The notes under the pieces were generated by a model that saw only the letters and a program-made list of their open reading frames with translations, had not been told where the DNA came from and did no database searches. From Octopus sinensis (Eukaryota), in the NCBI RefSeq assembly GCF_006345805.1, contig NC_042999.1, positions 142,662,001-142,726,000 on the forward strand: a stretch of 64,000 nt of DNA. Direction: 5' to 3'. Both the position numbers and the translations under genes were made by a program. This document shows, piece after piece, positions 2,891 through 58,460 of this stretch (its first letter is position 1; every line of letters begins with the position of its first letter).

Positions 2891-4330
2891 AATTAGCAGT
2901 CTTTTGCATCGCCTTCATTTTTTTTGTGTTTGTGTGTGTGTGTGGGGGGGTGTAGTGTTTTTGTTGGCAGCTGATCCACTTTGAAGTTTTCCAGTCATTT
3001 TCCAAGTTCTTCAGGCAGCAAAAAGGTATATTTACACACACACACCACACACACACACACACACACACCACACACACACACACACACACGAACATATATA
3101 TATATATATATATCTGAGGAAATTATATTTTATAAATTTTGAGAAATATTTTCTAAAGTATTTTCTCTCGGGAAATGCATGAACGTTATAACTTCCATTT
3201 TCCTATCTCCTGATTACAACACAGCTAACGGTTTATTGATGTGTGTCCCTTAACATGAAAGGTCAACACTATTCACTGTTTGTCATCCTAGTGTATTAGA
3301 TATTGATTTATCTAATGCATTAGTACACACACACAAACACACACACACTTGTATGTATTATGCGTGTGTGTATACATTTGGAAAGACTTGTAATAAACTA
3401 GTAGCCACTATCAAATAAAGATTCAGTATGAGAATATTTATTAAATTAAAATATATATATTAAATATATGTGTCGTGTGCCCATGTGTCTCTGCGTGTGC
3501 GCAGGCGTTTGACTACATGCATTTATTTGCTTATGTATATTCGTTAAATCCTCTTCCAATCTTTGCCATAAATATATATTTTCTTTTTCAACATTGTTTT
3601 ATGGTACCACATATCCTATCAGCTTTCACATTTTCACCAATCTCCATTGAACTTAATCCTTCAACCACTTATTTCTCTTCAACTAAACTTATCACTTTAT
3701 TCAATACATGACTCAGGTAATATCACAATTTTTTCCAGTTTTACTTCATTAAGTCTCCTGTGGCTTCCAGAAAAGATACCGTTTGTGAATTCACTTTTCG
3801 CACTAATACATTTTACACCTAACTTATGCTCTGTCTCATTTTATTGTCACATATTATGCTCACTCTTCTGGCCTATAGTTTGTTTTTTCTCACTACTTCT
3901 CACTCTCTTACCCATCTCTTTATTTTCGTTATATATTCTGCTCTTGTGTCCTGTTACCAGTCCTTATTTACATATCGAAGGATAAATATTTCTCTGTAGC
4001 TTTGAATTTTATATCTGTCTCTTATACTATCTCCCCATCCTTTAAGTAAATATTTCTTTGTTGGTGCATCTCTAAAATTACGACCTCTTCCTTAAAATAC
4101 ACATGTCTTTATCTTTAAATAATTCCATTATATTTTGTATCGTGTTACATTCGTACATACATATACAAATCCTAATTTCATACACTACAAATGATTGCAG
4201 AATCTGAGACTAGAAAAATGTGCAAGACTCTCTTAAGATGTAAAGAATGCTGAATAAAACAAGATACTTTCCTTCACAGCGCGGATCTTGGGGAGTTTTT
4301 ATAACACGCCTAAACGGAACAGTAAACTAT

Positions 4331-4498
4331 ACATACATACATACATACATACATACATACATACATACATGCATACATGCATACATACATACATACATAC
4401 ATACATACATACATACATACATACATACATACATACATGCATGCATGCATACATGCATACATACATACATACATACATACATACATACATACATACAT
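4331..4498. repeat. (TACA)n microsatellite
   Basis: Direct reading. Confidence 0.97.
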
Positions 4499-4659: not shown

Positions 4660-7600
4660 CCTTCTCGCCTCTCCTGAATGGCTACGAGAAAATCATGTCT
4701 CCCGGTCAGACCGGAGGACGAGGGAGCGTAGTGGTACTGATCCGTAAAAGCTTGGCTCTGCAGACAAGTACAGTCTATGTGGACCCTGAAGGTGGGCTGG
4801 TCGTCCTTGATGTGACATACAGCAGTAAGGCCTTCAGGTTGATCGGACTCTATGCACCTTGTGCTAGAGGCTTCCAAACTGATTTTTATCGGCGCCTACA
4901 GAACTTTCTCGTGACGTCGAAGACTTTAATAGTATTAGGAGACTTTAGGCTATCGTTGACGTACACATCGATAGTGTTGGCTCGATCCATAGGAAAGTGA
5001 ACTCACGTCTCGTGGATCTGCTTAAGCGGTTTCAGCTGGCAGATCGTTACAGACTTGACCATCCGAACGTCCCAGAGTGGACCTGGATGAGTGGCGACGG
5101 AAGGTTCAAGTCTTATCTAGACAGGATAGTGATAAGAACTAGAGATAAGTCTAGTTTTAGTTGTCCACAGCTCGTCCAGGTGCCCTATACGGACCATAGA
5201 ATGGTCAAGTGTAGACTGGACATAGGTAGCACACTAAAGATAGGAAACCGCTACTGGAAGCTGAACAAGTCTATTTTGACTTGTGAGGCATACCGCAGTC
5301 GGATTAAGGAGTTAGTGCAGAGGGCGTTAACCGGAGCCGTGGTTAATAACTGGTGGTGGTTCGCCCTGAAAAGAGCCATTCGATTCGAGTCAATTAGGTT
5401 TAGTAAGCAACTAAGACTAGATAAGGCTAGATTAGAAGGGCAATTAGCTAAGAAGTTAGAGGAGGCGTTGAGGTTGGGCTCTGCATCTCACATTTTGGCG
5501 GCGAGAACGGCTTTAGACCGTCACCTCAAAACCAAACATGAAGGGTGTAGAGTTCGGGCTAAAGTACGAGCATTGGGCCGCGAGGGAATTAATGTTGCCG
5601 GATGGGCCCGTACGATAGAAACCCGGCGTGGAAACAATGTCACAATTAGGTCTCTTGTTGACGGAAACGGATGCACGGTGAAGGAGCGGGACGAGATGTG
5701 TGAGGCACTTTACAAGCACTTCGCCGAGTTGTTCGGGAGGTGCGGGACGCTGGATCATGGTGAGGCCCTTAGGGACTTCCTGTCTTGTGGCCCGCGTCTC
5801 TCGGCACGAGAGGCTGAGTGCTGTGAGGGGCCAATCACAGCCCCAGGGAGAAGTCGCCGGGTCTCGATGGTCTGCCCTATGAGTTTTTTAAAAGTATGCC
5901 AGACTTGTTCGGGCACCTGCTGGCTAGCGTCTTCGCCAACTGGCAGCAGAATGGGAAAATTCCCAAGTCTGCGAGCCGGGGTGTGGTGACGTTGATCAGG
6001 AAGGACCCGAGCAAGGGGGACAAGATAGGCAACTTCAGGCCCATAACTCTGCTGAACACAGAGTTAAAGATTTTGGCCAAGGTGCTGGCGAAAAGGTTGG
6101 CGCGGGTCGTGGATAAACTTGTCGGAGAAGCGCAAACGTGCGCTATCCCGGGCAGGACGATGCACGACAATCTCCACCTTATACGCTACTCCTTAGAGAG
6201 GGTCGGGAAGCTTTCTGGCGCAGGGGGGGGGGCACTGGTATATTTAGACCAGTCTAAGGCATTTGATAGGGTCGACCATCGGTACTTGGCGGCGGTCCTC
6301 GGGGAGGCTGGCCTGGGCCCGACCTTTCGAGGTTGGATCGCTGCTTTGTATAGCGACATCGAGTCTGTGGTCAAAGTGAACGGCTTCCTTTCGAAGCCGT
6401 TCAGGATCGAGCGTTCAGTTCGTCAGGGGTGTCCCCTGTCCCCGCTTCTATATGCGTTGGCTCTTGAGCTCTTGCTGCGGAAGTTGGAGACAATAGGGGG
6501 CGCACCGCATGATCTATGGTGTGGAAGAGGAGCTACGGCTTACGCGGATGACATCTCCATCATCGTGGCAGATGATGACCAGCTTCCAGTGGTGGAAGAG
6601 GCCATCAAAAGCTACGAGGCGGTGGCAGGAGCAAAGGTGAACAAGGACAAGTCGGTCGGTTTGCAACTCGGCACCTTGAGGGGCAAGCCGATGCCGTCCA
6701 ATAACGTCGTGGGGCGTTGGACGGAAGGTCCTGTTAAGCTGCTCGGAGTCTGGTTCGGGCGAGACCTCCAGATAGAGAAAAATTGGAGTGAGGTGGCCGG
6801 CAAGGTGACCGCTCTAACCCAGACTCGGTCTGGACGAGCGTTATCCCTGCTAGGGAGGGTGGAGGTGGTACAGATGTTCATAGCATCAGTAGTCACCTAC
6901 CGCCTGACCGTGGTGCCTTGCCTTGATTTGTGGCTGAACAAGTTGGAGAGAATCCTTTTCCACTTCTTGTGGAAAGGAGGGAAGCCACTTATAAAGCGCT
7001 CTGTCTGTTGCCAGAAACCGCTAAAGGGTGGGCTAGGGATGCCTTGGCTGAAGATGCGAAAGGTCGCGTTAAGGTTGAGGCACCTCTGGCTTTACTTGGA
7101 TGGAGAACAGGTGTGGTCACCGCACGTTCGATTCTACCTTCCGCGATTAACGTCCTTAACGGACATTGGTAATTGGATCAAGCAGAGACCTAGGCTGGAG
7201 GACTGGCAATTGGAGTGCCGTCAGGCACTTCAGCTACTCTCTCGGGCGGGCAATGCCGGCAACAGGAGTTCCACCGCGGATTTCTATAGCGGGTTAGTGG
7301 AGGTTAAGTCCCAAGACGCCTTGGGGGAGACCCTGGGCTACGATGAAAATCAGTTGACCAACCTGTTCCGGAGAACGTTCGGGCCGGGGTACCTGGATAA
7401 TTACCAGAAATCCCTGGCCTGACAGTGTTTCCGTGCGGCGTTACCTGTTCGCGACAAGCTGTCAAGGCACGGAAGTGCCGTCTCGCCGACATGTCCGCGA
7501 TGTGAGCAGGATAGGGAAACCGTCTTGCACGCATTCGTGGAGTGTCCGGAGTTATCGGGACTGATTGCTTTCGCCGAACAACTGTTGTCAGTGAATGGAA

Positions 7601-10559: not shown

Positions 10560-11284
10560 ATAAACGATCGACTGAAAAAAGTCGTCTTCAGAAGACCAGA
10601 AGGAATGCTTCAAAAGCTCATATGGTTATAAAAATCAATTACTGATTAACAAAGCCAAAATCGAAGATTGTAGATGGAGGAAGAACATTATAGGCATGTC
10701 ATAGAAAGAACGCATGAGTAAGACAATACCAATAACAGGTAGGTACATTAAATATATCATTATTAAATGACCAACGAACAAAAGGAGAAACTATAAAATC
10801 TTACTCTAGACCCCGTCCCTATTAGAAGACTTTTTCGAGAGACTAACTCTGCTTGGTGTTGACACTTTTAGCCAACATCATAATTGTGACTGGATTTGGA
10901 TTCAAATTCTATGGGAAGACACTCAACCATATTTTGTATTTGGGTAACCTTTCGGTTATTGTCTGCAATAAACAACCGAAAAAATTGTTAAATACAATAG
11001 TATACAGTACATATTCACGGGAGAAATTGTTTTGAAATTTAGTTTAGATTTTTTTTTTTTTTAATGGTTAAGGTAACTTTGAGAAGAGAACAATTCATGA
11101 AATATCCCTCATATCGTGGTATATAAAGAAGCAGAGATAAGTGAATTAGAAGAAGCACAAACTTACAAATACTTAAAAATTAATGAACTACAGAGAACAC
11201 ATAAACGAAAGGAAGAAGCTGGAAAAAATATTGTGGACACATTTGATTAATACTTCAAACAGAGCTAGATTCAAAATATAAGAG

Positions 11285-11290
<6 letters not shown>
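10560..11290 (+). pseudogene. R4/Dong-type (RLE) LINE remnant, left part
   Basis: Translates to EDQKECFKSSYGYKNQLLINKAKIEDCR, NHILYLGNL (degenerate NHLLYMDDL), QTYKYL and ILQTELDSKYKRI. Continues at 19631. Confidence 0.7.
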
Positions 11291-11316
<26 letters not shown>

Positions 11317-11695
11317 TGCAATTAAGGACAACTACTTAATAAGGAAAACTTAACAAGAAATTGTCAGGTAGATAGCGTATGTATAATATTGCCCTCTATA
11401 TATAAATTATATGTTCAATAAGAAATAATTATTTTCGAAATTTTTTTCTCTTATATGAGGTTTTTACGCTATCTACCTGACAATTTCTTGTTAGTTTTCC
11501 TTATTAAGTAGTTGTCTTAATTGCAAAATTTTTATTCCGAAAAAACTTTTCCTCTCCCGAAATGCAATTTTGTAAAAGTTTGCCACTCACCCGGATGTAA
11601 TAATATAACTCACCCATGTGCTTCGTTGATGTTGATCAGTTAGCTGTTCGGCTTAAGCGAGGCAGGGTCGTTGTTTATTTATAATACATTCAGTT

Positions 11696-11739
11696 GCCTG
11701 CTGATGATTACGTAAGTATGAAATCACTGTGATACAGGC
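11696..11739 (+). ncRNA. Type I hammerhead ribozyme, array unit 1
   Basis: GCCUG-CUGAUGA-U-UAC(GUAA)GUA-U-GAA-AUCA(CUG)UGAU-A-CAGGC; predicted cleavage after 11734. Confidence 0.75.
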
Positions 11740-12179
11740 CTATATTTTTAAATGTCTTACTTTGAAAAATTGCATTCGGTGGGAATTAGTAATATTTTTG
11801 GTAGAAATGACTGATTGTCCTCCCTAGCGTTTTGCATGTATATATAATGCCCTGGCTCTGGCATGTATGTATAATTATGCCCTCTATATATAATTAATAT
11901 GTTCAATAAGAAATAATTATTTTCGAAATTTTTTCTCTTATGAGGTTTTTACGCTATCTACCTGACAATTTCTGTTAAGTTTTCCTTATTAAGTAGTTGT
12001 CCTTAATTGCAAAATTTTTATTCCGAAAAAACTTTTCCTCTCCCGAAATGCAATTTTGTAAAAGTTTGCCACTCACCCGGATGTATATATATAAACTCAC
12101 CCATGTGCTTCGTTGAGTTGATCAGTTAGCTGTTCGGCTTAAGCGAGGCAGGGTCGTTGTTTTATTATAATACATTCAG

Positions 12180-12223
12180 GCCTGCTGATGATTACGTAAG
12201 TATGAAATCACTGTGATACAGGC
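12180..12223 (+). ncRNA. Type I hammerhead ribozyme, array unit 2
   Basis: Identical 34-nt core at 12185-12218 with a 5-bp stem I. Confidence 0.75.
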
Positions 12224-12666
12224 TATATTTTTAAATGTCTTACTTTGAAAAATTGCATTCGGTGGGATTAGTAATATTTTTGGTAGAAATGACTGATTGT
12301 CCCTCCTAGCGTTTGGCATGTATATATAATGCCTCCTGGCATGTATGTATAATTATGCCCTCTATATATAAATTAATATGTTCAATAAGAAATAATTATT
12401 TTCGAAATTTTTTCTCTTATGAGGTTTTTAACGCTATCTACCTGACAATTTCTTGTTAAGTTTTCCTTATTAAGTAGTTGTCCTTAATTGCAAAATTTTT
12501 ATTCCGAAAAAACTTTTCCTCTCCCGAAATGCAATTTTGTAAAAGTTTGCCACTCACCCGGATGTAATATATATAAACTCACCATGTGCTTCGTTGATGT
12601 TGATCAGTTAGCTGTTCGGCTTAAGCGAGGCAGGGTCGTTGTTTATTTATAATACATTCAGGCAGG

Positions 12667-12706
12667 CTGCTGATGATTACGTAAGTATGAAATCACTGTG
12701 ATACAG
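12667..12706 (+). ncRNA. Type I hammerhead ribozyme, array unit 3 (weakened stem I)
   Basis: Identical core at 12670-12703; stem I reduced to 3 contiguous bp by a local indel. Confidence 0.65.
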
Positions 12707-13142
12707 GCCTATATTTTTAAATGTCTTACTTTGAAAAATTGCATTCGGTGGGATTAGTAATATTTTTGGTAGAAATGACTGATTGTCCCTCCTAGCGTTT
12801 GGCATTTATATAATGCCTCCTGGCATGTATGTATAATTATGCCCTCTTATATAAATTAATATGTTCAATAAGAAATAATTATTTTCGAAATTTTTTCTTA
12901 TGAGGTTTTTACGCTATCTACCTGACAATTTCTTGTTAAGTTTTCCTTATTAAGTAGTTGTCCTTAATTGCAAAATTTTTATTCCGAAAAAACTTTTCCT
13001 CTCCCGAAATGCAATTTTGTAAAAGTTTGCCACTCACCCGGATGTAATATATAAAACTCACCCATGTGCTTCGTTGATGTTGATGATCAGTTAGCTGTTC
13101 GGCTTAAGCGAGGCAGGGTCGTTGTTTATTTATAATACATTC

Positions 13143-13190
13143 AGGCCTGCTGATGATTACGTAAGTATGAAATCACTGTGATACAGGCCT
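13143..13190 (+). ncRNA. Type I hammerhead ribozyme, array unit 4
   Basis: 7-bp stem I AGGCCUG/CAGGCCU enclosing the core at 13150-13183. Confidence 0.8.
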
Positions 13191-13621
13191 ATATTTTTAA
13201 ATGTCTTACTTTGAAAATTGCATTCGGTGGGATTAGTAATATTTTTGGTAGAAATGACTGATTGTCCCTCCTAGCGTTTGGCATGTATATATAATGCCTC
13301 CTGGCATGTATGTATAATTATGCCCTCTATATATAAATTAATATGTTCAATAAGAAATAATTATTTTCGAAATTTTTTCTCTTATGAGGTTTTTACGCTA
13401 TCTACCTGACAATTTCTTGTTAAGTTTTCCTTATTAAGTAGTTGTCCTTAATTGCAAAATTTTTATTCCGAAAAAACTTTTCCTCTCCCGAAATGCAATT
13501 TTGTAAAAGTTTGCCACTCACCCGATGTAATATATAAACTCACCCATGTGCTTCGTTGATGTTGATCAGTTAGCTGTTCGGCTTAAGCGAGGCAGGGTCG
13601 TTGTTTATTTATAATACATTC

Positions 13622-13669
13622 AGGCCTGCTGATGATTACGTAAGTATGAAATCACTGTGATACAGGCCT
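13622..13669 (+). ncRNA. Type I hammerhead ribozyme, array unit 5
   Basis: 7-bp stem I enclosing the core at 13629-13662. Confidence 0.8.
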
Positions 13670-14249
13670 ATATTTTTAAATGTCTTACTTTGAAAAATTG
13701 CATTCGGTGGGATTAGTAATATTTTTGGTAGAAATGACTGATTGTCCCTCCTAGCGTTTGGCATGTATATATAATGCCTCCTGGCATGTATGTATAATTA
13801 TGCCCTCTATATATAAATTAATATGTTCAATAAGAAATAATTATTTTCGAAATTTTTTCTCTTATGAGGTTTTTACGCTATCTACCTGACAATTTCTTGT
13901 TAAGTTTTCCTTATTAAGTAGTTGTCCTTATTGCAAAATTTTTATTCCGAAAAAACTTTTCCTCTCCCGAAATACAATTTTGTAAAAGTTTGCCACTCAC
14001 CCGGAAATATATATAAACTCACCCATGTGCTTCGTTGATGTTGATCAGTTAGCTGTCATTTGCGGAGCAGTTTGTTGCGTTTTGCGTTGTGAGAAATTTG
14101 CTGCTGCTTTTAAGAGAATTCGAAGTTATAATATCATTGTTTGTGTAAACTGTTCTGAACAGTACCCGTCGTAAACGATAATTTTCGCCCTACGGGGCAG
14201 AAAATTTTGTTCTAACCATATTCTTGTTACCTAAAGGTAACCTTCAGAG

Positions 14250-15672
14250 ATGGAGTTCGACCTAACGTCGAAGGAAGACTTTCCCGTGATGGGAAAAGGT
14301 GAAAAAGAGGAAAACCCAGTACCCAGGCAATCATTCTCGGCCGCGGTGGGCGGCGCCATGTTGGAGATAGAATTCAAGATTGAACAACTGTACGAATATA
14401 GGAATTTGGTAAAACTAGAAGGAGGAGAAATAAGGCTTGTGCCGCCGCAAGCGAAGGTGCAAGAAATTAAGGAAAAGATCGTAATCTATAAAGTGTACAA
14501 CTTTAAAGAAAAAAAGATCATGGAAGTAAAAAACGAAACCGTTGAGAAATGCTTGGCCCCGGTGTGGGATAAAATTCGCCATATAGTGAGAGGTGCACGA
14601 AGTGCCACGATCGAAGCACACTTTGACACGGCAGAGGTGGCGAAGGAGGTGTCGTCGTTGACCCTTAAAAACGACGACATCATGCTGCTACCCTCGTATA
14701 TGGGGAAGAGAACCGCAAAGGTAACGGTTGAAGACATACCCAGAGGATACGACACCATGTGGGTAGCAGCGGCGGTCTTACATGATGTAGAACGCGAAAT
14801 GAACATACTGCAAATGAGAAGGAAGGAAGCGGTACGTTGGAGGGGTCAGACTCTGGAGCTCCTCGTACAGGCAGAGAACAAGATCTTGGAGAGCCTGCCT
14901 GACAGGATTTTTAACGAGGATGGCACGTCCATGAGAGTGTCGGTGGAAGGACGAAGACCCAGATGCTTCAAGTGTGGAGAAAAGGGTCACGTCCGTTCCA
15001 ATTGCATCAGGAAAAAAAGAACAGAAGATGCGGCCCCTCCAAGTGTACCCAATGCGGAGGGAGAGGAAGCTAAGAAGAACAACAAAACGACCAAGACAAA
15101 TACGGAAGCAAAAATAGACCAAATAGAACCGATGGAATACACCCAAGTTACGCACAAAAGAAAAAAGAAAATACCCTGGACTCCCCTCCCCAAACAAGGA
15201 AAAAAACAACTAGCACTACAGACACACACATTAAGCAAATCCCCCAACCCTACCCCCATGGCACTGTTTTCATTGGAAAACAGTTTGCCAACCCCTCCCC
15301 GTAAAACAAGATCCTAAAAAATGTTTATTGAAAAACGAAAAAATAATTGCGTTTGATGAAAAAAACGAAAAAGTTTACAAATGCTGCAAACTGTCGAGGT
15401 TCATGCTGTATAGCAGAACCTCAGATGGAAAAGCAATTGCGCGCTTCGCCAAGGTAGGCGAGAACGAATGGAAGGAGGAGGTTCTTCAGGAACACCTGAA
15501 GAACCGCCTAATAAGAGATGTCACCAAAGAGGTGTTAGAAGGAAAACTAACAATAACCCCGGCAACCACACCAACCCAGAGCCCAGTGGCAACGCCGGTC
15601 AAAAGCCCTGCAGTAGCGGAAGAAAGGGAAGCAGGCAAAATTAGACCGCCGTGCTCCCTTTCACAAACGTGA
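14250..15672 (+). CDS. Tx1 copy B ORF1 (gag-like, CCHC zinc knuckle), one frameshift near 15303-15306
   Basis: ATG at 14250; knuckle CFKCGEKGHVRSNC. Removing one A from the run at 15303-15306 joins ORF 14250..15317 to ORF 15328..15672 (RKQDPKKCLLKNEK...). Confidence 0.8.
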
Positions 15673-15700
15673 GTATAGTTATTTCTCTCCCTCGCTCACA

Positions 15701-18700
15701 ATGGCCAAGCTGGGCTGCCTAAACATACGTGGAATGGGGTCGAAATGGAAACAAATTTGTTTCCTGAACGACCTCACGACACAAGGTATAGATGTTGCTA
15801 TCGTAACCGAGTCCAAGATGAGCGAGACCCAAGCGTTCTCACCTCTTCTAAATGGTTTCGAGAAATTTATTTCTCCTAGCCGAGGAGGAGGAAGAGGCGT
15901 GGCAGTCTTCATCAGGAAGAGCTTGGACCTGCAGGTAAGTACTGTCTTTCTGGACCCAGAAGGCAGGCTGGTTGTCCTGGATGTGACTCACGCAAGTAAA
16001 CAGTCCTTCAGGTTGGTAGCTGTCTACGCCCCGAACGAGGGTAGACAGACGGTTTTCTTTCGAAGCCTGGAGCCCTTTCTGGCGACGTCGAAAACAGTAA
16101 TACTAGTAGGGGACTTTAACACTGTCCTTGAAGCGCACATCGACAGTGTTGGCTCAACTAATAGGAAGGGGAATCCTAGCCTCAAGGGTCTACTAGAGAG
16201 CTTTGATCTAGTGGACCGTTACCGACTGGATGAGCCGAGCGTTCCACAGTGGACGTGGAGTAACTACGACGGCTCACACAGATCGTACCTAGATAGGATA
16301 ATTATAAAAAAAGAGATAAGGATACGTTTAGTTGTCCACAATTTCATATTGTACCTTACTCGGATCACAAGTTTGTGACGTGTGAGGTGCAATTAGACAA
16401 GTGTCATAGACAGGGACCCGGGTACTGGAAGCTGAACAAGGCTATTTTGAATTGTGAAGACTTCCGTACCCGGATTAAGGAGTTAGTTCAGAGGGCATTG
16501 TGCGGCACCGTCATTAACAATAGATGGTGGCACGCCCTCAAAAGAGCCATTCGATTAGAGTCCGTTAGATTTAGCAATCAGATAAGGACAGATAGAGCTA
16601 GTCTAGAGGGCGATTTAGTTAAGAATCTAGACGAGGCAATGGAAGCTGGCTCTGCATCCGGAGTACTCTGGCGGCAAGGACGGTATTGTACCGACACCTT
16701 GACTCCAAACACGAAGGTTGCAGAGTCAGAGCTAAGCTGCGCGCCGGGAAACGAGAAGGTGTTAACGTAGCCGGATGGGCCCGTCGTGTGGAGAGTAAGA
16801 GAGGCAACAGAGCCTCAATAAAATCTTTGACTGGCGAACAGGGACAAAAGATCTATGGACAGGAGGAGATGCAAAAGTTTCTTCACCAGCATTTCGCGCG
16901 CGCGTTCGGGGGTGGTGGCCCGCTGGACCGGGGGAGTGCCTTAAGGGACTTCCTGGCCGGCGGGCCGCGGCTCGCGGGGCGTGAGGCGGAGTGCTGTGAA
17001 GGAGCGATCACTCCCGCGGAAATAAGGGAAGTGCTGGCCGAGTGCGCCGGGGAGAAATCGCCGGGGCTGGATGGTCTGCCCTACGAGTTTTACCAAAATA
17101 TGCCGGATTTGTTCGGGGGAATACTGGCAGGCGTCTACACGAACTGGCAGCAGAACGGGAGAATTCCCAGTTCTGTAAGCCGGGGAGTGGTGACGCTAAT
17201 CCAGAAAGACCCGAGCAAAGGGGATATGATTAGTAACTACAGGCCCATAACTCTACTTAATGTAGAGTTAAAGATTTTGGCCAAGGTGTTAGCAAAAAGG
17301 TTGACGGTTGTCGTGGAGAACTTGTAGGGAGAGCACAGACATGTGCAATTCCAGGCAGGTCGATCCAGGACACCTTCACCTTATACGCTACACCTTAGAT
17401 AGGGTGGGTAAAGTAACCGGCAAAGGTGGGGTAATGGTCCACTTGGACCAAAGTAAAGCCTTCGATAGGGTAGACCATGGGTACCTGGCGGCGGTCCTCG
17501 AAGCGACCGGACTGGGTCCCGAATTCCGCGGGTGGATCTCCGCTATGTACAGCGGCATCAAGTCCACCGTCCAGATAAACGGTTACCTAACAGAACCGTT
17601 TTCGATCGAATGTTCAGTACGTCAGGGGTGCCCCTTGTCACCACTTTTGTACGTATTGGCTCTCGAGCCACTACTGCGAAGGTTGGAGAGGCTGGGGAGT
17701 AACTCAGATGGAATCGGAGGTGGGAGGTCGGTCACTGCCTATGCGGATGACATCACCCTCATCGTGTCCAAGGAGGCCCAACTACCTGGTGTAGAGGAGG
17801 CTATCAGAGGATACGAGGCGGTGGCAGGAGCAAAGGTTAACAGGGACAAATCGGTCGGCTTGCGCCTCGGCACCTGGAGGAACAAGCCGATATTGTCCAG
17901 TGTTGTGGGACACTGGACGGATGGCCCTGTTAAGTTGCTGGGAGTCTGGTTTGGACCGGACTCCCAAACGGAGAAGAACTGGAGCGAGGTGACGGGCAAG
18001 GTGGAGGCCATAATACGGACCTGGTCCGGAAGGTCTCTGTCCTTGAAAGGAAGGGCGGAGGTGGCGCAGATGTTTATTGCATCCGTAATCACCTACCGCC
18101 TGACCGTCGTCCCTTGCCCCGACTCATGGCTTAACAAGTTGGAACGAGCCCTCTTCCGCTTTTTGTGGAAAGGAGGAAAGCCACTTGTGAGACGCTCCGT
18201 GTGCTGTCAAGAACCGTTAAAGGGTGGGTTAGGGATGCCTTGGTTAATGATGCGCAGACATGCGTTGAGACTAAGACATCTCTGGCACCACCTGGAAGGT
18301 GATAAGGTGTGGAGTCCGTTGGCAGAGGGATTTTTTCCGAGACCGGCCTCCTTAGTTAATTTTAAACCCGGTTACATCAGAAGATGCAATCTGACTCCAT
18401 GGCAAAAGGAGTGCCGACAGGCACTCACGCTGATCCACAGGACGGGCAAGGCCGGCTGCGGAAATACCACCTCGGTATTTTATAGAGGGCTGGTAGAAGG
18501 TAAAAACGATGACGCCCTAGGAGGGGCTCTGGGGTTTGATGAAAACCAGCTTGCCAATCTGTTTAAGAAAACGTTCAGGTCGGGGTATTTGGATAATTTC
18601 CAAAGATCCCTGGCTTGGCAGTGCTACAGGAATGCTTTACCTGTTCGCGAAAAGTTATCACGGCACGGAGTTCCAGTGCCACCGACGTGTCAAAGATGCG

Positions 18701-19089
18701 GGCTGGACGATGAAACCGTTCAGCACGCTTTTTTTCATTGTCGGAAGTTGAACGACTTGATAAGTTACGCAGAACACGTGTTATCGCATCTGGGACGAGT
18801 ACAGCTGTCGGCTGAGTCTATGATTAAGATGATACCGCCAACTGGACTCTCGAAGGAAGGTGAGGCATGTTTTCACTGCACGGTTGCAGTGGTAAAGGAA
18901 TGCATGTGGAGAACGAGAATGGAAGGAACCGCGACAGGGTCATTTGTCTCCGGGCCCGGCTTGCTCACCTACTTCAGATATCATCTGAGAAGCAAGATGG
19001 GACTGGAGAGGAGGACCCTGCCGCGGGGAGTGTATGCGAATAGATGGAAGGAAGTGGAAAGAAAGGTGGGTACGAGAAGGCCAGCTTGA
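15701..19089 (+). CDS. Tx1 copy B ORF2 (APE-RT-CCHC), three frameshifts
   Basis: APE motifs MAKLGCLNIRG, AVYAP, GDFN and SYLDR; RT motifs PGLDGLP, NYRPITLLN, RQGCPLSP and YADD; zinc finger CQRCGLDDETVQHAFFHC. Frame changes near 16310, 16680 and 17320. Confidence 0.9.
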
Positions 19090-19331
19090 CCATGGAGGAG
19101 AGAGAGGAAGTGGAAGCTGCAGGGCCTCAACAATTGCCGGGGTGTGAAAGCTCCAGTATAATCACAAAGGTCAGCTACAAGTGTTTGTAACACTAGTTAC
19201 GCAAAAACTATTACTTATAACGAATACAAACGAAACTTTTTTTAATCGATTCTCTTAAATTTTCTTGTATGTATGTATGTCCTGTATTCGTCCTTTCTAT
19301 GTATTAATTTTTATAATTGTAATAAAGAAAG

Positions 19332-19588
19332 TGTTGATCAGTTAGCTGTTCGGCTTAAGCGAGGCAGGGTCGTTGTTTATTTATAATACATTCAGGCCTG
19401 CTGATGATTACGTAAGTATGAAATCACTGTGATACAGGCCTATATTTTTAAATGTCTTACTTTGAAAAATTGCATTCGGTGGGATTAGTAATATTTTTGG
19501 TAGAAATGACTGATTGTCCCTCCTAGCGTTTGGCATGTATATATAATGCCTCCTGGCATGTATGTATAATTATGCCCTCTATATATAA

Positions 19589-19591
<3 letters not shown>
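19332..19591 (+). repeat. Hammerhead array, right part (rest of unit 6 and terminus)
   Basis: Resumes exactly at the TSD, ends in the same gtatgtataat...tatataaat segment with which the direct array starts, then runs into (AT)n. Confidence 0.95.
19394..19441 (+). ncRNA. Type I hammerhead ribozyme, array unit 6
   Basis: 7-bp stem I enclosing the core at 19401-19434. Confidence 0.8.
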
Positions 19592-19630
<39 letters not shown>

Positions 19631-19634
<4 letters not shown>

Positions 19635-21060
19635 ATAATTTAAGACCCATTATGCTAAACTATAGTTAGGTTGTCAAATGGAAGCTTAGTGAATGAACAA
19701 GACGAGAAAGGAAAACAAAAAATGTAATGACTGCATTTAGAACACACCATTGCTTAAAGATTACATTTATCACGTATACGGAAACGCGGGACTATGAAGA
19801 TTTCTAATAAAAAGAAAAGGGAAGCTGGTACAAAATAGCCACAACGCACGAACAAACAAAAGTCTTTTTTCTGTCTTCCTCGAATGCAACAAATATAGAG
19901 ACAGACAATTGCGAGGAAAATAGAGAAACAACAACAGAGACAATAAAAACAACTAAAAGCTAAACTGAAAATGGGATTACAAAATGCCGTGCTTAAAGGT
20001 AGGCAAGAAAATCCCCTGCATGGCCAGTAACTGACAAGGAGTAGGCGTGGCTGTGTGGTCAGAAAGTTGCTTTGCAACCACCTGATTTCGGGTTCAATCT
20101 CACTGTGCGCACCTTGAGCAAGTATCTTCTACTATAACCTGGACTGATCAATACTGAGTGAATTTGGTGAACGGAAATGGTGTGGAAGCCCATCGCGCGC
20201 ATGTGTGTGTATGTGTGCGCGTGTGTATGTGTGTGCGCGTGTGTGTGAGTGCGTGAGTGTGTGTGTGTGTCTGTGCTCGTGCGCGTCTTTGTGTTTGTCC
20301 GCACCACCAACGCTTGACAACCGGTGCCGGTCTGTTTACGTTCCTGTAAGTTAGTGGTTCGGCAAGTACTGGAATCGATTATTCGACTTAACTCTTCGAT
20401 GCCCTAGTATGGCCGCAGTCCAATGAATGAAACAAGTAAAAGATAAATATCATTAATAAAAAAAGTAGGACAGCAAAATCCGAGAATTAAAAAAATTCAG
20501 TACTGTTTGAGAAGAGCAGAATTCAAAGATGAATCCAAAAGATTTTTGATCATGACACAAGACCAAACTACCAATACCATATAAGGATATAGAACACCAT
20601 AAGTAACTATAAAAGGAAACTCAGTCTGTCAACGACCTAACACTACTGCTTGGCTCTTGTAATGCCTGTAGCAGAGTCCATTCAAGAATGTGAACCAGAT
20701 CACCCATGTGAATAAAATTCAATATTAGATGTGCTACTTCCTATTGCATACACCAATTGTTACTTCTTGCTTACGCAGCTACCCCCCCCCCTACCAGTTT
20801 AGAAATCTTGAAAAAGATTATGGGTGCTGCTCTTTCTCCTTTGGCTCATTCATAAGAAATATGGGAAAACCGGTAATAGTATACAAAGCACATACAACCT
20901 TAAACCTAACACAGTAATAATAATATGGAAGCAAGATTAATGTCCTCATATATAGATGAATACAGTAGCTTAAAACAAATGACGGAAAAAATTAAACAGC
21001 AGCTTGGAGAGATAAAGTTTATATACATTTAAGACGGACAAACCAGCAAAATATTATACA
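19631..21060 (+). pseudogene. R4/Dong LINE remnant, right part (interrupted ~19755-20470)
   Basis: INNLRPIMLNYS*VVKWKLSE*TRRERKTKNVMTAFRTHH at 19631-19750, then EFKDESKRFLIMTQDQT (ETEGF..AQDQ motif) near 20520. Confidence 0.65.
20040..20450 (+). mobile_element. tRNA-derived SINE family A with internal (TG)n
   Basis: A-box tggctgtgtggtc, B-box gggttcaatctc, internal microsatellite and 3' tail gaaacaagtaaaagataaa. Confidence 0.8.
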
Positions 21061-23851: not shown

Positions 23852-25582
23852 CAGTGGCGGCTCGTGTATAGGCACTGTGGAACTGCAGCACCCCCTATTT
23901 CCACTCGATATTATCGATAACATCTAATATGATGAGTACTTTTTTCTTTAATTCTTTCTTTGTACATGTACATTATATACTGCTTAAACTTAATGCCAGT
24001 AGCCATTCCCTAGTTTATGAAAACGCACGAAACTCCTTGTATAGAACTGTGCACTTCACAGTGTCTGGCTATTGTGCGCATGCTCACATGTCCGAGATAG
24101 AAAGCTGCACGCTAGGGAGTGAGAGCAGTGTGGTTCACGCAGTGCCGACCTTGGAGTGCTGGTGAAAGGTAGTATTTCTATTTGACTCCGCGTGTAGTGT
24201 GCTTAAAAACGTTTTTATATCCTTGAATGTAATAAAGTGTAGAATTAGATTATTATTCTGCTTCCAGCTACAGTGTTGTTGCCAGGATTTGAAAAATAGG
24301 GCATATTTCCCCCCCCCCCTTATTTTGTGATTTAGGTGGAATTTTTGAAAAACAAGGGGAATTCGCGGTGGTGTCCAGTGAAGAAGTAAAACACACTACA
24401 CAACAGTGTCTAAAACGCGAAACGATCAATTTTATGTATAAATATTCTTTTTATGTTTGTTTCCTTTTACACAATATTAAAACAACGAAAGACGGCGAGC
24501 TGGCAGAAATATCAGCACGCCGGGCGAAATGCTTAGCGGTGTTTCATCTGTCTTTACATTCCGAGTTCAAATTCCACCGAGGTCGACTTTGCGTTTCATT
24601 CTTTCCTGGTCGATAAATTAAATACCAGTTGCGAACTAGGGTTGATCTAATCGACTAGCCCCTTCCCCAAAATTGTCGGGCCTTGTGCCTAGAGTAGAAA
24701 GGAATATTTAAACAACAGAAGGCAGTGAGCTGGCAGAATCGTTAGCACGCTGGACGAAATGCTTAGCGATATTTCGTCTGCCGCTACGTTCTGAGTTCAA
24801 ATTCCGCCGAGGTCGACTTTGCCTTTCATCGTTTCGGGGTCGATCAAATAAGTACCAGTTACGCACTGGGGTCGATATATTCGACTTAATCCGTTTATCT
24901 GCCCTTGTTTGTCCTCTCTGTGTTTAGCCCTTTGTGGGTAGTAAAGAAATACGTATTTCATCTGCCGCTACGTTCTGAGTTCATATTCCGCCGAGGTCGA
25001 CTTTACCTTTCATCCTTTCGGGGTTGATAAATTGTGTACTGGGGTCGATCTAATCGACTGGCCTCCTCCTCCAAAATTTCGAGCCTTGTGCCTAGAGTAG
25101 AAAGGAATATTTAAACAACAGAAGGCGGTGAGCTGGCAGAATCGTTAGCACGCTGGACGAAATGCTTAGCGATATTTCGTCTGCCGCTACGTTCTGAGTT
25201 CAAATTCCGCCGAGGTCGACTTTGCCTTTCATCGTTTCGGGGTCGATCAAATAAGTACCAGTTACGCACTGGGGTCGATATATTCGACTTAATCCGTTTA
25301 TCTGCCCTTGTTTGTCCTCTCTGTGTTTAGCCCTTTGTGGGTAGTAAAGAAATACGTATTTCATCTGCCGCTACGTTCTGAGTTCATATTCCGCCGAGGT
25401 CGACTTTACCTTTCATCCTTTCGGGGTTGATAAATTGTGTACTGGGGTCGATCTAATCGACTGGCCTCCTCCTCCAAAATTTCGAGCCTTGTGCCTAGAG
25501 TAGAAAAAAAAGAATATTAAAACAACGGCTAAAACTTTTCTGAAGCGGCACCCCAACTAATTTGATCTACGAGCCGCCACTG
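23852..25582. mobile_element. Non-autonomous hAT DNA transposon
   Basis: Perfect 14-bp TIRs CAGTGGCGGCTCGT (23852-23865) and ACGAGCCGCCACTG (25569-25582). 8-bp TSD ctcataag/ctcacaag (7/8 match), the length typical of hAT. Confidence 0.85.
24491..25510 (+). mobile_element. Tandem SINE family B cluster including a 403-bp tandem duplication
   Basis: Marker ggaatatttaaacaacagaagg at 24701 and 25104; the two blocks are nearly identical. Confidence 0.85.
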
Positions 25583-25699: not shown

Positions 25700-26338
<639 letters not shown>

Positions 26339-37544: not shown

Positions 37545-40500
37545 TGAAATTTGCGAAAAGACGTGAAAGATATGGAAAGACACTTGAAACCTGACAGATT
37601 GAATGTAGACCCAAATTTTACAAATGCTGATAAAACTTTTAATCACTGGTTTAGAATTTTCACTAACTTTATAAACTCACTACCAGGGCAGGAAGGTAGG
37701 ATTATCGATAAATTCAATCTTTTGATTAATTATGTAGAACCGAACGTATACGAATTCATCAGCGAAGTTAAAGACAAAGAACAAGCTGTGAATACACTAA
37801 AGAGTGTACATTAAACCACAGAACATCGTAATGGCACACCATCTTTTAGCCACAAGAAAACAGAAACCAGGGGAATTTCTAGACCAGTTCTTAAACGAAC
37901 TCAAAATATTAGAGAAAGACTGTGATTTTGTTGCAGTGAGTGCTGAGCAGTACCGGTCTGAAATGATTCGAGAATCATTTATAAATGGACTCACTTCGAA
38001 TCAAATACGACAAAGACTATTAGAAAACAAAAGTGTCGACCTCAGTACAGCTTATGATCAAGCACGTTCACTAGATGTGGCGCAACAGAGTTCCAGTGTC
38101 TTTCTAAACTCTGAGGGTGCCAACTTCAGTCCAACTGCACCCATTGTAGCTAAGCCAATAGATTCCTTAAAGCAGGAAGGAAAACACTCTGCCGCGACCC
38201 GAAAAGGAGACCCCTCGCAATGTTGGTTTTGTGGATATTCCAGACACCCGCGGACTCACTGCCTTGCGCGGAAAGCAGTCTGTCACAAATGCCAAAAAAA
38301 TAGGGCATTTTGGAAAACTATGTAGGAGCAACGCAGCAACTGTAACACAGGATGATGGTAAATATGATTTACCTTCCGAGTAACCTCCATGGTTATACTG
38401 AACAATAGCTATAAAGCCGAAGCATTAATTGATAGCGGTAGCACTGACAAGACCTCCATCAGTGAAAAGCTAGTGAACACACTCAACATCAAGCCGGTCA
38501 AATTGAAGAACGTCATTGGTATGGCTTCTGCATCTCTTTCTGCGGAATCCAAGGGCTACTGCACTGTTTCACTAACAATGACTAATCAGAAATACTACCA
38601 TTTGAGACTGTTACGTGCTCAGAAACTTGTGTACTGACCTAATTCTGGGTACTGACTTCCAAGAACGGCATGAAAGTATTACCATACAATACGGAGAACA
38701 GAGACCACCATTAACATTTACTGCGCTAAAAGCTATGAAAACTGATTCTCCAAAGCTATTCGCTCATCTCAGAGAGGACTGTAAAACCTATTGTAGCCAA
38801 ATCGCGAAAATACTCGGAACGTGATTGAGAGTTCATCAGGACAGAAGTACGCCGCTTAGCAGATGCGAACATTATTGAACCTAGCAACACCCCTTGGAGA
38901 TCGCAAATGTTAGTAGTTCAAGAAAAAAAAAGCGAAGAATGGTGATTGACTACTCAGAGACGATTAACAAATATACACAGCCTGATACCTACCCCCTTCC
39001 TAAAATTGATGAGTTAGTGAACACTATCGCCAAGTACAAAGTCTACAGTACTATAGACTTACGTTCGGCATACTATCAGATTCCTCTATCAGAGAAAGAC
39101 CGTCAATTCACTGCCTTTGAAACTGATGGTAAACTGTGGCATTACACTAGGATGCCATTTGGAGTAACTAACGGCAGCGCATGTTTCCAACGTATAATGG
39201 ACGACTTCGTGAGTAAATACAAGCTACGAGATACGTTCCCATTCATAAACAATTTAACCATATGTGGGAAAGATCAAAATGGCCGCGATAAAACTTAGAA
39301 AAATTTGAAATGGCAGCAAAAAGTGAAGGGTTTACCCTGAATGAAGACAAATGCGTTTACTCAACAACAACTCTTGACTTTCTTGGATACCGTATCTCAC
39401 ACAATACCCTCAGCCCTGACCCAGAAAGGCTTGCTCCACTCAATCTTCCTACGCCAACTGACCAGAAATCATTAAAACGTATAGTCGGTATGTTTTCTTA
39501 TTATGTTAAGTGGATCTCCAAATTTTCTGACAAATTATATCCTCTAAATTACGTATTACAATTTCCTCTAAACAGCCAACAAGTAAAAGCATTTGAGTCA
39601 TTAAAAGTAGAACTAGCCAATGCTGCCATTCAAGTAATAGATGAGAACATTCCATTTACTGTTGAGACGGATGCTTCGGATTTTGTCATATCTGCAACAC
39701 TAAATCAAGATGGAAGACCAGTCGCATTCCATTCTCGCACGCTGCAAGGTAGCTCCTCAGTTGAAAAGGAAACACAAGCAATTATCGAATCAATTCATTA
39801 TTGGATACACTCTCTTCTAGGTAGACAGTTTACATTAATTACTGATCAACGTTCTGTTGCATTCATGTATAATTATAAAGCGACGAACAAAATTAAAAAT
39901 GATAAAATTATGAGCTGGCGCATTGCGTTAACTCCATGCTCATATGAAACCACAATATTATAAACCAGACTCAGTTAACTTAATTAAGGCCATGCAGCTC
40001 TTCGAGCGAATTTCCATCGATTTCAAAGGTCCGATTTCTTCCACGAAGCATCCTTATCTCCTAACAATTGTTGACGAATATTCTCGGTTTCCGTTTGGTT
40101 ATCCAGTATCAGACATATCAGCTCAGACTGTAATAAAGTGTCTTACAGACATGTTCTCAGTTTTTGTTATGCCCAGTTATATACATTCAGATCGTGGAAC
40201 TGCCTTTATGTCGACAAGATTGAGAGAATGGCTCCTCAGTAAGGGCATTGCAACGAGTAGGACGACACTGAAAACAGTCAAGTAGAAAGATATAATGATA
40301 TTATTAGAAGTCAGTACTATTCTCTTTGAAAACGCGTGCCCTTCCAGTATCTTCATGGGAAACAGTTCTTCCAGACACGTTGCATTCAATCAGATCTCTG
40401 CTAACGCCGCTCCACTAACGCCACTCCTCATGAACGTCTTTTTAACTATCAAAGACGTTCAGGAACAAGAACATCTATGCCAACATGGCTTCTTAATCCA

Positions 40501-58099: not shown

Positions 58100-58460
58100 T
58101 TATCAGTTCATCGTTGTGTACATACATACATACATACATACATACATACATACATACATACATACATACATACACACACACACATACAACATACATACAT
58201 ACATACATACATACATACATACATACATACATACATACATAATATTTAAAGGATGACGGTTAAGTCAAGATACTTCCTTTCACAACCTTGCTACTAAGTC
58301 GGTGGACGATCAAAATTTACTCTAAAATAAGAAGAAAGAGAAGACATACATACATGCATGCATGCATACATATATACATGCATGCATACATACATACATA
58401 CATACATACATACATACATACATACATACATACATACATACATACATACATACATGCATG
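58100..58460. repeat. (TACA)n microsatellites
   Basis: Direct reading. Confidence 0.95.

What the first reader, a model, noticed from the sequence alone, without database searches (positions are those of the whole stretch)
11316..19591. Retrozyme-like tandem array: six ~480-nt units, each with a type I hammerhead ribozyme
Seen: every unit has stem I-CUGAUGA-stem II (GUAA loop)-GAAA-stem III-AUA-stem I, and the 34-nt core is identical in all six while the rest of the unit varies by small indels. Cleavage-to-cleavage lengths are 484, 485, 480, 479 and 479 nt, the last after removing the Tx1 and one TSD. There is no ORF, and the direct array is terminally redundant by about 33 nt. Established: metazoan non-LTR retrozymes and Penelope pseudo-LTRs carry tandem type I HHRs whose transcripts are cut to monomers that can circularise. 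Inference: a non-coding, self-cleaving retroelement family copied by rolling-circle-type reverse transcription of a ~480-nt circular RNA. I do not know whether this family has been described.
Basis: partly seen in the sequence, partly recalled or inferred. Interest (0 to 1): 0.93.

Follow-up and report, generated by a model that had tools for sequence, protein, structure and literature searches.

The report
Hammerhead-ribozyme tandem repeat (retrozyme) array
This is a six-unit tandem repeat of a non-coding ~480-base element, probably in a cephalopod genome; each unit carries a hammerhead self-cleaving RNA motif, so it looks like a new family of the known animal "retrozymes", not a new kind of element.

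Summary
Window 11316-19596 contains about 6.1 head-to-tail units of ~480 bp (33% GC, no ORF). Each unit has an identical 34-nt type I hammerhead core. Cleavage-to-cleavage distances are 484, 485, 480, 479 and 479 nt, the last after removing a nested 5275-bp LINE and one copy of its 18-bp target duplication. A full hammerhead descriptor matches nowhere else in the 64 kb and is expected about 2.5e-5 times per unit by chance. The circular monomer folds far better than shuffles (z = -5.2).

Three caveats:
- The motif fails Rfam's curated thresholds: 17.4 bits against 52.
- It has a U·U at the base of helix II and a marginal helix III, so it probably cleaves as a dimer.
- The invariance of the core within this array is not evidence of selection, because other stretches are invariant for longer.

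A 64-nt inverted unit fragment sits at the left end. (TA)n microsatellite flanks both ends. Both are published hallmarks of insertions by Penelope-like elements.

No other copies were found in any searchable collection. I found no paper describing a cephalopod retrozyme. Verdict: a probable new family of the known metazoan non-LTR retrozymes. Activity and circular RNA remain untested.

The parts
11286..11315 (.). Left flank: (AT)n microsatellite abutting the element.
   Evidence: TRF 11286-11316, period 2, 16 copies. (TA)>=8 runs cover only 0.42% of the window.
11316..11379 (-). Inverted fragment of the unit (unit positions ~211-274) at the 5' end of the array. It shares a 3-nt GTA microhomology (11377-11379) with the start of the direct array.
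   Evidence: BLAST of the unit: 211-283 matches 11379-11307 on the minus strand at 95.9%. Inverted-repeat arms 11327-11379 pair with 11465-11516. Junction read from the sequence.
11377..14056 (+). Direct tandem array, 5.6 units of ~480 bp, up to the LINE insertion point.
   Evidence: TRF period 480, 96% matches, score 4976. Unit alignment. Pairwise substitutions 0.4-2.6%.
11694..11741 (+). Hammerhead copy 1. Helix I is reduced to 5 bp. Predicted cleavage after 11734.
12178..12225 (+). Hammerhead copy 2. Helix I is 6 bp including a G·U. Predicted cleavage after 12218.
12660..12710 (+). Hammerhead copy 3. Helix I has a 3-nt AGG bulge in its 5' strand. Predicted cleavage after 12703.
   Evidence: matches only the relaxed descriptor.
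13143..13190 (+). Hammerhead copy 4. Helix I is 7 bp. Predicted cleavage after 13183.
13622..13669 (+). Hammerhead copy 5. Helix I is 7 bp (AGGCCUG/CAGGCCU). Predicted cleavage after 13662.
14039..14056 (+). Left copy of the 18-nt target-site duplication of the nested LINE (TGTTGATCAGTTAGCTGT).
14057..19331 (+). Nested non-LTR retrotransposon, not part of the retrozyme. ORF1 has a CCHC knuckle (14250-15317). ORF2 carries an APE endonuclease, RT and zf-RVT and is split over several frames (15328-19089). There is no long poly(A).
   Evidence: Pfam hits. Nearest solved structure is human L1 ORF2p, E = 3.9e-25. Best named relative is from Argonauta hians, 55% identity.
19332..19349 (+). Right copy of the LINE target-site duplication.
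19350..19596 (+). The rest of unit 5 plus the last partial unit. The boundary with the flank is ambiguous between 19591 and 19596 because the unit's own TATATATAAATT merges into (TA)n.
   Evidence: BLAST: 377-479 matches 19332-19434 and 1-161 matches 19435-19596. Sequence.
19394..19441 (+). Hammerhead copy 6. Helix I is 7 bp. Predicted cleavage after 19434.
19592..19632 (.). Right flank: (TA)n microsatellite abutting the element.
   Evidence: TRF 19580-19632, period 2, 26.5 copies..

Best explanation
The locus is one integrated copy of a non-autonomous, non-coding retroelement of the metazoan 'non-LTR retrozyme' kind, in what is probably a cephalopod (octopod-like) genome.

Proposed mechanism. 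Only the sequence features are shown here; the rest is inferred by analogy with coral, mussel and axolotl retrozymes.
1. The + strand of the array is transcribed as a multimer.
2. Each type I hammerhead cuts after AUA (for example after 13662). It probably acts as a double hammerhead formed between two motifs, because helix III is marginal in cis and stable in trans.
3. The ~480-nt monomers, with 5'-OH and 2',3'-cyclic phosphate ends, are ligated by the host RtcB-type ligase into highly base-paired circles.
4. A reverse transcriptase supplied in trans copies the circle, or an uncut multimer, by target-primed reverse transcription. That gives a head-to-tail DNA array with no fixed end point. 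The most likely source is a Penelope-like element, given the insertion architecture.
5. This copy landed in a (TA)n microsatellite. Priming was at the unit's own UAUAUAUAAAUU stretch on the right. A second priming or template-switch event produced the 64-nt inverted fragment on the left.
6. An L1/Tx1-group LINE later inserted into unit 5-6 with an 18-bp TSD.
For: - Six exact hammerhead cores sit in phase with a 480-bp repeat.
- All invariant core positions are present: C3-A9, G12-A14, A15.1-U16.1 and H17 = A. The three helices are in the type I topology.
- No other descriptor match occurs on either strand of the 64 kb.
- Chance expectation is 0-0.003 strict, or 0.043 relaxed, matches per 64 kb. 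That is about 2.5e-5 per unit.
- Rfam's hammerhead HH9 model is the top weak hit and aligns the core correctly.
- Unit GC is 33%, and the longest stop-free stretch is 63 codons.
- The circular monomer has an MFE of -118 kcal/mol against -87 ± 6 for dinucleotide shuffles: z = -5.2, and 0 of 200 shuffles reach it.
- Helix III is worth -0.2 kcal/mol in cis and -12.1 in trans. This parallels the dimer-dependent newt and axolotl hammerheads. Axolotl HHR_Amex2 also has a U·U at the base of helix II and still cleaves (PMC7229834).
- Both array ends abut (TA)n, which covers only 0.42% of the window.
- There is an inverted 5' fragment with 3-nt junction microhomology.
- Published PLE insertion hallmarks are partial tandems, an adjacent inverted 5'-truncated copy, and (TA)n bias (PMC8557442).
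- Retrozymes have been proposed to be PLE-derived and PLE-dependent (bioRxiv 10.64898/2026.07.22.740005).
- The reported unit-length range of 51-972 bp, with most families having at most 7 units, includes this array.
Against: - No hammerhead family reaches Rfam's gathering score: the best is 17.4 bits against 52.
- Helix II is 3 bp with a U·U where G10.1-C11.1 is usual.
- No loop 1-loop 2 tertiary contact could be identified.
- The thermodynamic MFE of the isolated motif replaces helix III with an alternative helix: -13.8 against -11.8 kcal/mol.
- Three of the six copies have a weakened helix I, through non-compensatory changes.
- The core is no better conserved than several other stretches of the unit.
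- No second copy of the family was found anywhere I could search, so mobility and copy number are undocumented.
- There is no PLE in the window. The RTs present belong to APE-type LINEs and an LTR element.
- The inverted fragment and the direct array end at different unit positions. The ends therefore do not form the simple terminal inverted repeat drawn for PLEs.
Confidence: 0.7

Rival explanations
1. This is an ordinary satellite or local tandem duplication whose unit happens to contain a decayed or weak hammerhead-like motif. The array grew in place by unequal crossing-over or replication slippage. It makes no functional self-cleaving or circular RNA.
For: - The Rfam gathering score is not met.
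- There is a U·U at the base of helix II, and helix III is marginal in cis.
- The core is no more invariant than other parts of the unit.
- No other copies were found.
- The window holds another tandem duplication of similar period (403 bp) that has no ribozyme.
Against: - A complete hammerhead descriptor in a 480-nt unit is expected about 2.5e-5 times by chance.
- The monomer is far more structured than shuffles, z = -5.2.
- The ends carry an inverted fragment with junction microhomology and sit exactly in a (TA)n tract. In-place expansion does not predict either.
- Weak motifs with the same defects do cleave in axolotl.
Confidence: 0.15
2. The array is not an independent retrozyme family. 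It is a remnant of a Penelope-like element insertion: repeated, heavily 5'-truncated 3' portions (pseudo-LTR sequence) of an autonomous PLE that carries the same hammerhead.
For: - PLE insertions form partial tandems with an adjacent inverted 5'-truncated copy, prefer microsatellites including (TA)n, and carry hammerheads in their pLTRs (PMC8557442).
- In Xenopus, retrozyme consensus sequences are homologous to PLE pLTRs.
Against: - Six in-phase units of constant length, with no trace of a PLE ORF in or next to the array.
- PLE hammerheads are described as minimal, atypical variants. This motif has a 4-bp helix III and a 7-bp helix I.
- No PLE RT or GIY-YIG was seen in the window.
Confidence: 0.1
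3. The array was mobilised by an APE-type LINE, such as the L1/Tx1-group family nested in it, through twin priming rather than by a PLE. Alternatively, the nested LINE is a sequence-specific element that targets this repeat.
For: - A 5' inversion with junction microhomology is the classic outcome of L1 twin priming. This rests on established knowledge and was not tested here.
- A LINE of the L1 group lies inside the array in the same orientation with a clean 18-bp TSD.
- Some Tx1-clade elements are known to target specific repeats. This is from my own knowledge.
Against: - The unit shares no sequence with the LINE, including its 3' end (BLAST).
- The array has no poly(A) or other LINE-like tail.
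- The homologous LINEs fetched from Argonauta hians and another assembly are not next to any hammerhead repeat.
- One insertion cannot show site specificity.
Confidence: 0.05

Closest known systems
Metazoan non-LTR retrozymes (Cervera & de la Peña 2020, PMC7229834): Acropora 220-240 bp, Mytilus 350-390 bp and axolotl 330/350 bp repeats
   Same: - Head-to-tail repeats, each with one type I hammerhead.
- Low GC.
- No ORF, LTR, PBS or PPT.
- A monomer predicted to be highly self-paired.
- Array sizes from dimers upward.
- A U·U at the base of helix II, as in axolotl HHR_Amex2.
- Likely dimer-dependent cleavage, as in newt and axolotl.
   Different: - The ~480-nt unit is longer than the 170-400 nt reported in that paper, though it lies within the 51-972 bp range of the 2026 preprint.
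- There is no sequence similarity to any retrievable relative.
- The host appears to be a cephalopod, and I found no description of a retrozyme in that group.
- Expression and circularity are untested here.
Penelope-like element insertions and their pseudo-LTR hammerheads (Craig et al. 2021, PMC8557442)
   Same: - Tandem arrangement.
- An inverted 5'-truncated fragment next to the upstream end.
- Insertion into a (TA)n microsatellite, so no discernible TSD.
- A hammerhead in the repeated part.
   Different: - There is no RT or GIY-YIG ORF.
- The hammerhead has longer helices than the minimal PLE variants.
- The inverted fragment and the direct array end at different positions of the unit.
Newt/salamander satellite 2 hammerhead repeats
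   Same: A tandem genomic repeat of a few hundred bp, transcribed in the known cases into self-cleaving monomers. Helix III is weak and favours a double-hammerhead.
   Different: - This helix III has 4 bp and a 3-nt loop. The newt and HHR_Amex1 type has a single-base-pair stem capped by a tetraloop.
- This locus is a small array of six units, not a large satellite. Copy number elsewhere in the genome is unknown.
Plant LTR retrozymes (PMC4918200)
   Same: Non-autonomous, non-coding elements that are proposed to propagate through a hammerhead-processed circular RNA.
   Different: The plant elements have type III hammerheads in ~350-bp LTRs, a PBS and PPT, 4-bp TSDs, GC above 55% and Ty3/gypsy partners. 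None of these is present here.

Membership tests
Hammerhead ribozyme, type I | Invariant catalytic core: C3 U4 G5 A6 N7 G8 A9, G12 A13 A14, an A15.1-U16.1 pair, and H17 (not G) at the cleavage site. | tested here: met
   CUGAUGA ... GAA A..U A^C is present in all six copies. The Rfam HH9 alignment places the core correctly.
Hammerhead ribozyme, type I | Three helices around the core. Helix I is open, and helices II and III are closed by loops. | tested here: met
   - Helix I: 7 bp in 3 copies; 5 bp, 6 bp, or bulged in the others.
- Helix II: 3 bp plus a GUAA loop, above a U·U at 10.1/11.1.
- Helix III: 4 bp plus a CUG loop.
- The helices are weak: the hammerhead fold is -11.8 against an MFE of -13.8 kcal/mol, and cis helix III is worth -0.2 kcal/mol.
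Hammerhead ribozyme, type I | Score at or above the curated Rfam gathering threshold of a hammerhead model. | tested here: not met
   - No gathering-level hit in the window.
- No hit at E <= 10 in a 9-kb search.
- HH9 scores 17.4 bits against 52, E = 0.036, when only 111 nt are searched.
Hammerhead ribozyme, type I | Loop 1-loop 2 tertiary interaction. | tested here: inconclusive
   Helix I is a continuous 7-bp stem with no conserved internal loop, and loop 2 is GUAA. No contact is evident from the sequence. Mussel retrozyme hammerheads also lack the archetypal contacts.
Hammerhead ribozyme, type I | Site-specific self-cleavage. | not testable with these tools
   This needs in vitro transcription of one-unit and two-unit constructs.
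Metazoan non-LTR retrozyme | [quoted passage not shown] | tested here: met
   There are 6.1 units of 479-485 bp and six hammerheads in phase.
Metazoan non-LTR retrozyme | Low GC (below 45-50%), with no ORF, LTR, PBS or PPT. | tested here: met
   GC is 33%. The longest stop-free stretch is 63 codons. The array is bounded by (TA)n, not by LTRs. PBS and PPT motifs were not searched for explicitly.
Metazoan non-LTR retrozyme | A monomer RNA that is highly self-paired. | tested here: met
   The circular fold is -118 kcal/mol with 63% of bases paired, z = -5.2 against 200 dinucleotide shuffles.
Metazoan non-LTR retrozyme | Multiple dispersed genomic copies (mobility). | tested here: inconclusive
   There is only one array in the 64-kb window. 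Searches found nothing in the metagenome, prokaryote-genome and viral collections or in the protein database. The host genome itself was not searchable.
Metazoan non-LTR retrozyme | Expression as monomeric linear and circular RNA. | not testable with these tools
   This needs a Northern blot, divergent RT-PCR or RNA-seq back-junction reads.
Penelope-like element (autonomous) | An ORF encoding a PLE-type RT with a GIY-YIG endonuclease. | tested here: not met
   There is no ORF in the unit. The RT-bearing ORFs in the window belong to APE-type LINEs or an LTR element.
Penelope-like element (insertion architecture) | Partial tandems, an adjacent inverted 5'-truncated copy, and insertion into a microsatellite. 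| tested here: met
   compared with the description in PMC8557442.
Tx1 clade of LINEs (the nested insert) | Placement of the RT inside the Tx1 clade by phylogeny, and sequence-specific insertion. | not tested
   Only the domain content (CCHC ORF1, APE, RT, zf-RVT) and the nearest solved structure, L1 ORF2p, were established. No reference Tx1 sequences were available.

The most novel reading that the evidence does not exclude
This single locus preserves both junctions of a whole multimeric retrozyme integration: a (TA)n target, priming inside the unit's own UA-rich stretch, and an inverted 5' fragment joined through 3-nt microhomology. If that reading is right, it is direct structural evidence that animal retrozymes are integrated as multimers by Penelope-type target-primed reverse transcription. 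It would also place a previously undescribed ~480-nt retrozyme family in cephalopods.
Probability: 0.4. Interest if true: 0.5.

Novelty: new member of a known kind. Interest (0 to 1): 0.35.

Why it matters
Animal retrozymes are abundant sources of small circular RNAs. Their function and their mode of mobilisation are unsettled. The link to Penelope-like elements rests mostly on co-occurrence and on pLTR homology in frogs.

A cephalopod family would extend the known host range, although I only infer the host from sequence relatives. The clean junctions at this locus give a concrete architecture to look for genome-wide: a (TA)n target and an inverted 5' fragment. The weak, probably dimer-dependent hammerhead with U·U at 10.1/11.1 adds a second natural example of that variant, after the axolotl one. 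None of this changes the picture of what retrozymes are.

Tried and rejected
1. Rfam at gathering thresholds on the whole window and at E <= 10 on 11000-20000 gave no hammerhead. Only a 111-nt search gave a weak HH9 hit.
2. I looked for other copies with exact-pattern scans. The 23-nt core was scanned in metagenome, prokaryote-genome and viral contigs. A second unit segment was scanned in metagenomes. A degenerate core was scanned in genome contigs. All returned zero.
3. I concatenated all stop-free peptides of at least 30 aa from the six frames of the unit and searched the 5.8-billion-protein database, hoping for spurious gene calls on related satellites. There were no hits.
4. I asked whether the nested LINE family is tied to hammerhead repeats. 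Its closest retrievable homologues, an Argonauta hians contig (L001) and a 3-kb contig (L002), have no CUGAUGA...GAAA hammerhead and no similarity to the unit.
5. Exact look-ups of two window ORFs to identify the source genome found nothing on record.
6. The idea that core invariance shows selection is rejected: equal or longer invariant runs occur elsewhere in the unit.
7. A Helitron or Helentron carrier was considered because of the A/T-rich target. I rejected it on inspection: there is no 5'-TC or 3'-CTRR terminus and no subterminal 3' hairpin.
8. A minus-strand ribozyme, which would allow symmetric rolling-circle RNA replication, was not found by the descriptor scan or by Rfam.
9. The weak C/D-box snoRNA hits only reflect the CUGAUGA string.
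10. One literature search was badly framed and uninformative.

Full report
**1. What is in the sequence**

Tandem Repeats Finder reports one large array at 11377-14056: period 480, 5.6 copies, 96% matches. BLAST of one unit against the window shows that the array continues at 19332-19596, on the far side of a 5.3-kb insertion. Nothing else in the 64 kb resembles the unit.

The 34-nt string CTGATGATTACGTAAGTATGAAATCACTGTGATA occurs exactly six times, all on the + strand, at 11701, 12185, 12670, 13150, 13629 and 19401. Taking the last A as the hammerhead cleavage position H17, the cleavage-to-cleavage distances are 484, 485, 480, 479 and 5772 nt. The 5772 becomes 479 once I remove the insert (14057-19331) and one copy of its perfect 18-nt target-site duplication, TGTTGATCAGTTAGCTGT.

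The direct array is 6.1 units long. The longest stop-free stretch in any frame is 63 codons.

**2. Is the hammerhead real?**

Read as RNA, the motif is:

AGGCCUG / CUGAUGA / U-UAC-GUAA-GUA-U / GAA / AUCA-CUG-UGAU / A^ / CAGGCCU

- All invariant core positions are present: C3-A9, G12-A14, the A15.1-U16.1 pair and H17 = A.
- The topology is type I, with helix I open.
- A structural descriptor I wrote requires helix I of at least 5 bp, CUGANGA, a helix II hairpin, GAA, an A...U-closed helix III hairpin, and a non-G at position 17.
- The descriptor finds five of the six copies. It finds the sixth when relaxed, and nothing else on either strand of the window.
- In first-order Markov sequence of the same composition, it matches 0 to 0.003 times per 64 kb with both strands scanned, or 0.043 times when relaxed. 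That is about 2.5e-5 per 480-nt unit.

Chance is therefore not a credible explanation for finding the motif in a tandem repeat.

There are real weaknesses.

- No hammerhead model reaches Rfam's gathering score.
- Nothing is reported even at E <= 10 in a 9-kb search.
- Only when 111 nt are searched alone does Hammerhead_HH9 appear, at 17.4 bits against a threshold of 52. The core is then aligned correctly.
- Helix II has only three pairs above a U·U mismatch, where G10.1-C11.1 is usual.
- Helix III in cis is worth -0.2 kcal/mol.
- The nearest-neighbour MFE of the isolated motif prefers an alternative helix: -13.8 against -11.8 kcal/mol for the hammerhead fold.
- Helix III is nearly palindromic, and two motifs can form a 10-bp trans helix worth -12.1 kcal/mol.

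That is the situation described for newt and axolotl hammerheads, which cleave poorly as monomers and well as dimers. [quoted passage not shown] I conclude that the motif is a plausible but weak hammerhead that probably depends on dimer formation.

**3. The conservation argument does not hold**

In the alignment of all units, 58 of 500 columns vary, mostly through 1-4-nt indels. The invariant runs are 44, 44, 37 (the core), 37 and 36 columns. By my count from those runs, about 7% of all 34-nt windows are invariant.

Units differ by only 0.4-2.6% in substitutions, so the array is simply too young or too homogenised to show selection. The changes that do touch the ribozyme weaken distal helix I in three copies, and they are not compensatory.

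**4. Properties of the unit**

GC content is 33%. Folded as a circle, the 479-nt + strand has an MFE of -118 kcal/mol against -87 ± 6 for dinucleotide shuffles. That is z = -5.2, none of 200 shuffles reaches it, and 63% of bases are paired. The minus strand gives z = -4.4. No ribozyme of any Rfam class, and no hammerhead descriptor match, lies on the minus strand. Only one polarity can self-process, as in known retrozymes.

**5.

The first 64 nt of the reported interval (11316-11379) are an inverted copy of unit positions ~211-274. It is joined to the direct array through a shared GTA at 11377-11379.

Both outer ends abut (TA)n tracts: (AT)16 on the left at 11286-11316 and (TA)26 on the right at 19580-19632. 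Runs of (TA)>=8 cover only 0.42% of the window, so the element sits inside a (TA)n microsatellite. On the right, the boundary falls within the unit's own CTCTATATATAAATT, where element and target sequence overlap.

These features are what the literature gives as hallmarks of Penelope-like element insertions (PMC8557442):
- partial tandems;
[quoted passage not shown] A 5' inversion with junction microhomology is also the classic product of twin priming by L1. That statement rests on established knowledge and was not tested here. Either way, the ends argue that the multimer arrived as one reverse-transcribed piece and did not grow from a single unit in place.

This fits the retrozyme model of reverse transcription of a circular or multimeric RNA with no fixed end point. 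[quoted passage not shown]

One mismatch with the PLE diagram remains: the inverted fragment and the direct array end at different unit positions. A circular template would allow that. This last point is inference.

**6. The insertion and the host**

The 5275-bp insert encodes an ORF1 with a CCHC knuckle, then an APE endonuclease, RT and zf-RVT spread over several frames. Its nearest solved structure is human L1 ORF2p, E = 3.9e-25. It is an L1/Tx1-group LINE. Tx1 membership was not tested. It shares no sequence with the unit.

Its best named relative is a protein of the paper nautilus Argonauta hians, at 55% identity. The window also carries a repeat that I recognise, from memory only, as the abundant tRNA-derived SINE of octopus genomes. 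The host is therefore probably a cephalopod, but this is inference. Exact-protein look-ups did not identify the assembly.

**7. Search for relatives**

None was retrievable.
- Exact and degenerate core patterns, and a second unit segment, gave zero hits in the metagenome, prokaryote-genome and viral collections.
- A six-frame peptide query gave nothing in the protein database.
- The homologous LINE loci that I fetched contain no hammerhead repeat.

Copy number, dispersal and covariation therefore remain untested.

**8. Comparison with what is known**

Metazoan non-LTR retrozymes were defined in 2020 as tandem repeats of roughly 150-450 bp. They have a type I hammerhead, low GC, and no LTR, PBS or PPT, and they are expressed as 170-400-nt circular RNAs in coral, mussel and axolotl (PMC7229834). 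A 2026 preprint extends unit lengths to 51-972 bp and notes that 75% of families have at most seven units.

The present array meets every sequence-level criterion. It differs only in its own sequence, its somewhat long unit and its host. Full-text searches found no paper describing hammerhead repeats or retrozymes in cephalopods. The giant squid genome paper merely lists 235 Rfam Hammerhead_1 hits.

**9. Verdict**

- The classification as a retrozyme-type hammerhead array is well supported at sequence level, and the insertion architecture strengthens it.
- Cleavage, circular RNA, rolling-circle reverse transcription and the identity of the mobilising enzyme are all inferred.

This is a new member of a known kind. 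Interest is moderate to low (0.35). The most useful new point is the pair of preserved junctions, which fit PLE-type integration.

Noticed in passing
window 11316-11379: A 64-nt inverted fragment of the repeat unit sits at the left end of the array. It is joined to the direct units through a 3-nt GTA microhomology. It matches the unit consensus better than the adjacent direct copy does.
   Followed up: yes
window 11286-11316 and 19580-19632: The whole element is bracketed by (TA)n microsatellite on both sides. That implies insertion into a (TA)n tract and hides any target-site duplication.
   Followed up: yes
window 14057-19331: A nested L1/Tx1-group LINE in the same orientation as the array. 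It has a perfect 18-bp TSD, its ORF2 is broken into several frames, and its 3' end (…AATAAAGAAAG) has no long poly(A). Whether this family targets the repeat specifically is unknown.
   Followed up: partly
window 4695-7422: A second, GC-rich (45-55%) APE-type LINE fragment with endonuclease-like and RVT_1 ORFs. It is preceded by an (ATAC)n microsatellite at 4329-4498.
   Followed up: partly
window 37804-40285: A fragment of an LTR-retrotransposon pol region: RVT_1, RT-RNase H and integrase core, in consecutive ORFs on the + strand.
   Followed up: partly
window 24635-25506 (also about 20040-20160): A 403-bp tandem duplication, 2.2 copies at 98% identity, built around a tRNA-derived SINE-like sequence (…GGCAGAATCGTTAGCACGC…GAGTTCAAATTCCGCCGAGGTCGAC…). 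There is no hammerhead in it. A related SINE-like segment lies just right of the array.
   Followed up: no
L001 (Argonauta hians contig BAAFZT010000001.1), 6585-6855 and 13124-13305: The closest named homologue of the nested LINE lies between (TG)n/(TA)n microsatellites. This hints that the LINE group may favour microsatellite targets.
   Followed up: no
window 4329-4498, 25915-26181, 58119-58468: Long (ATAC)n/(TACA)n microsatellites recur three times in the window.
   Followed up: no
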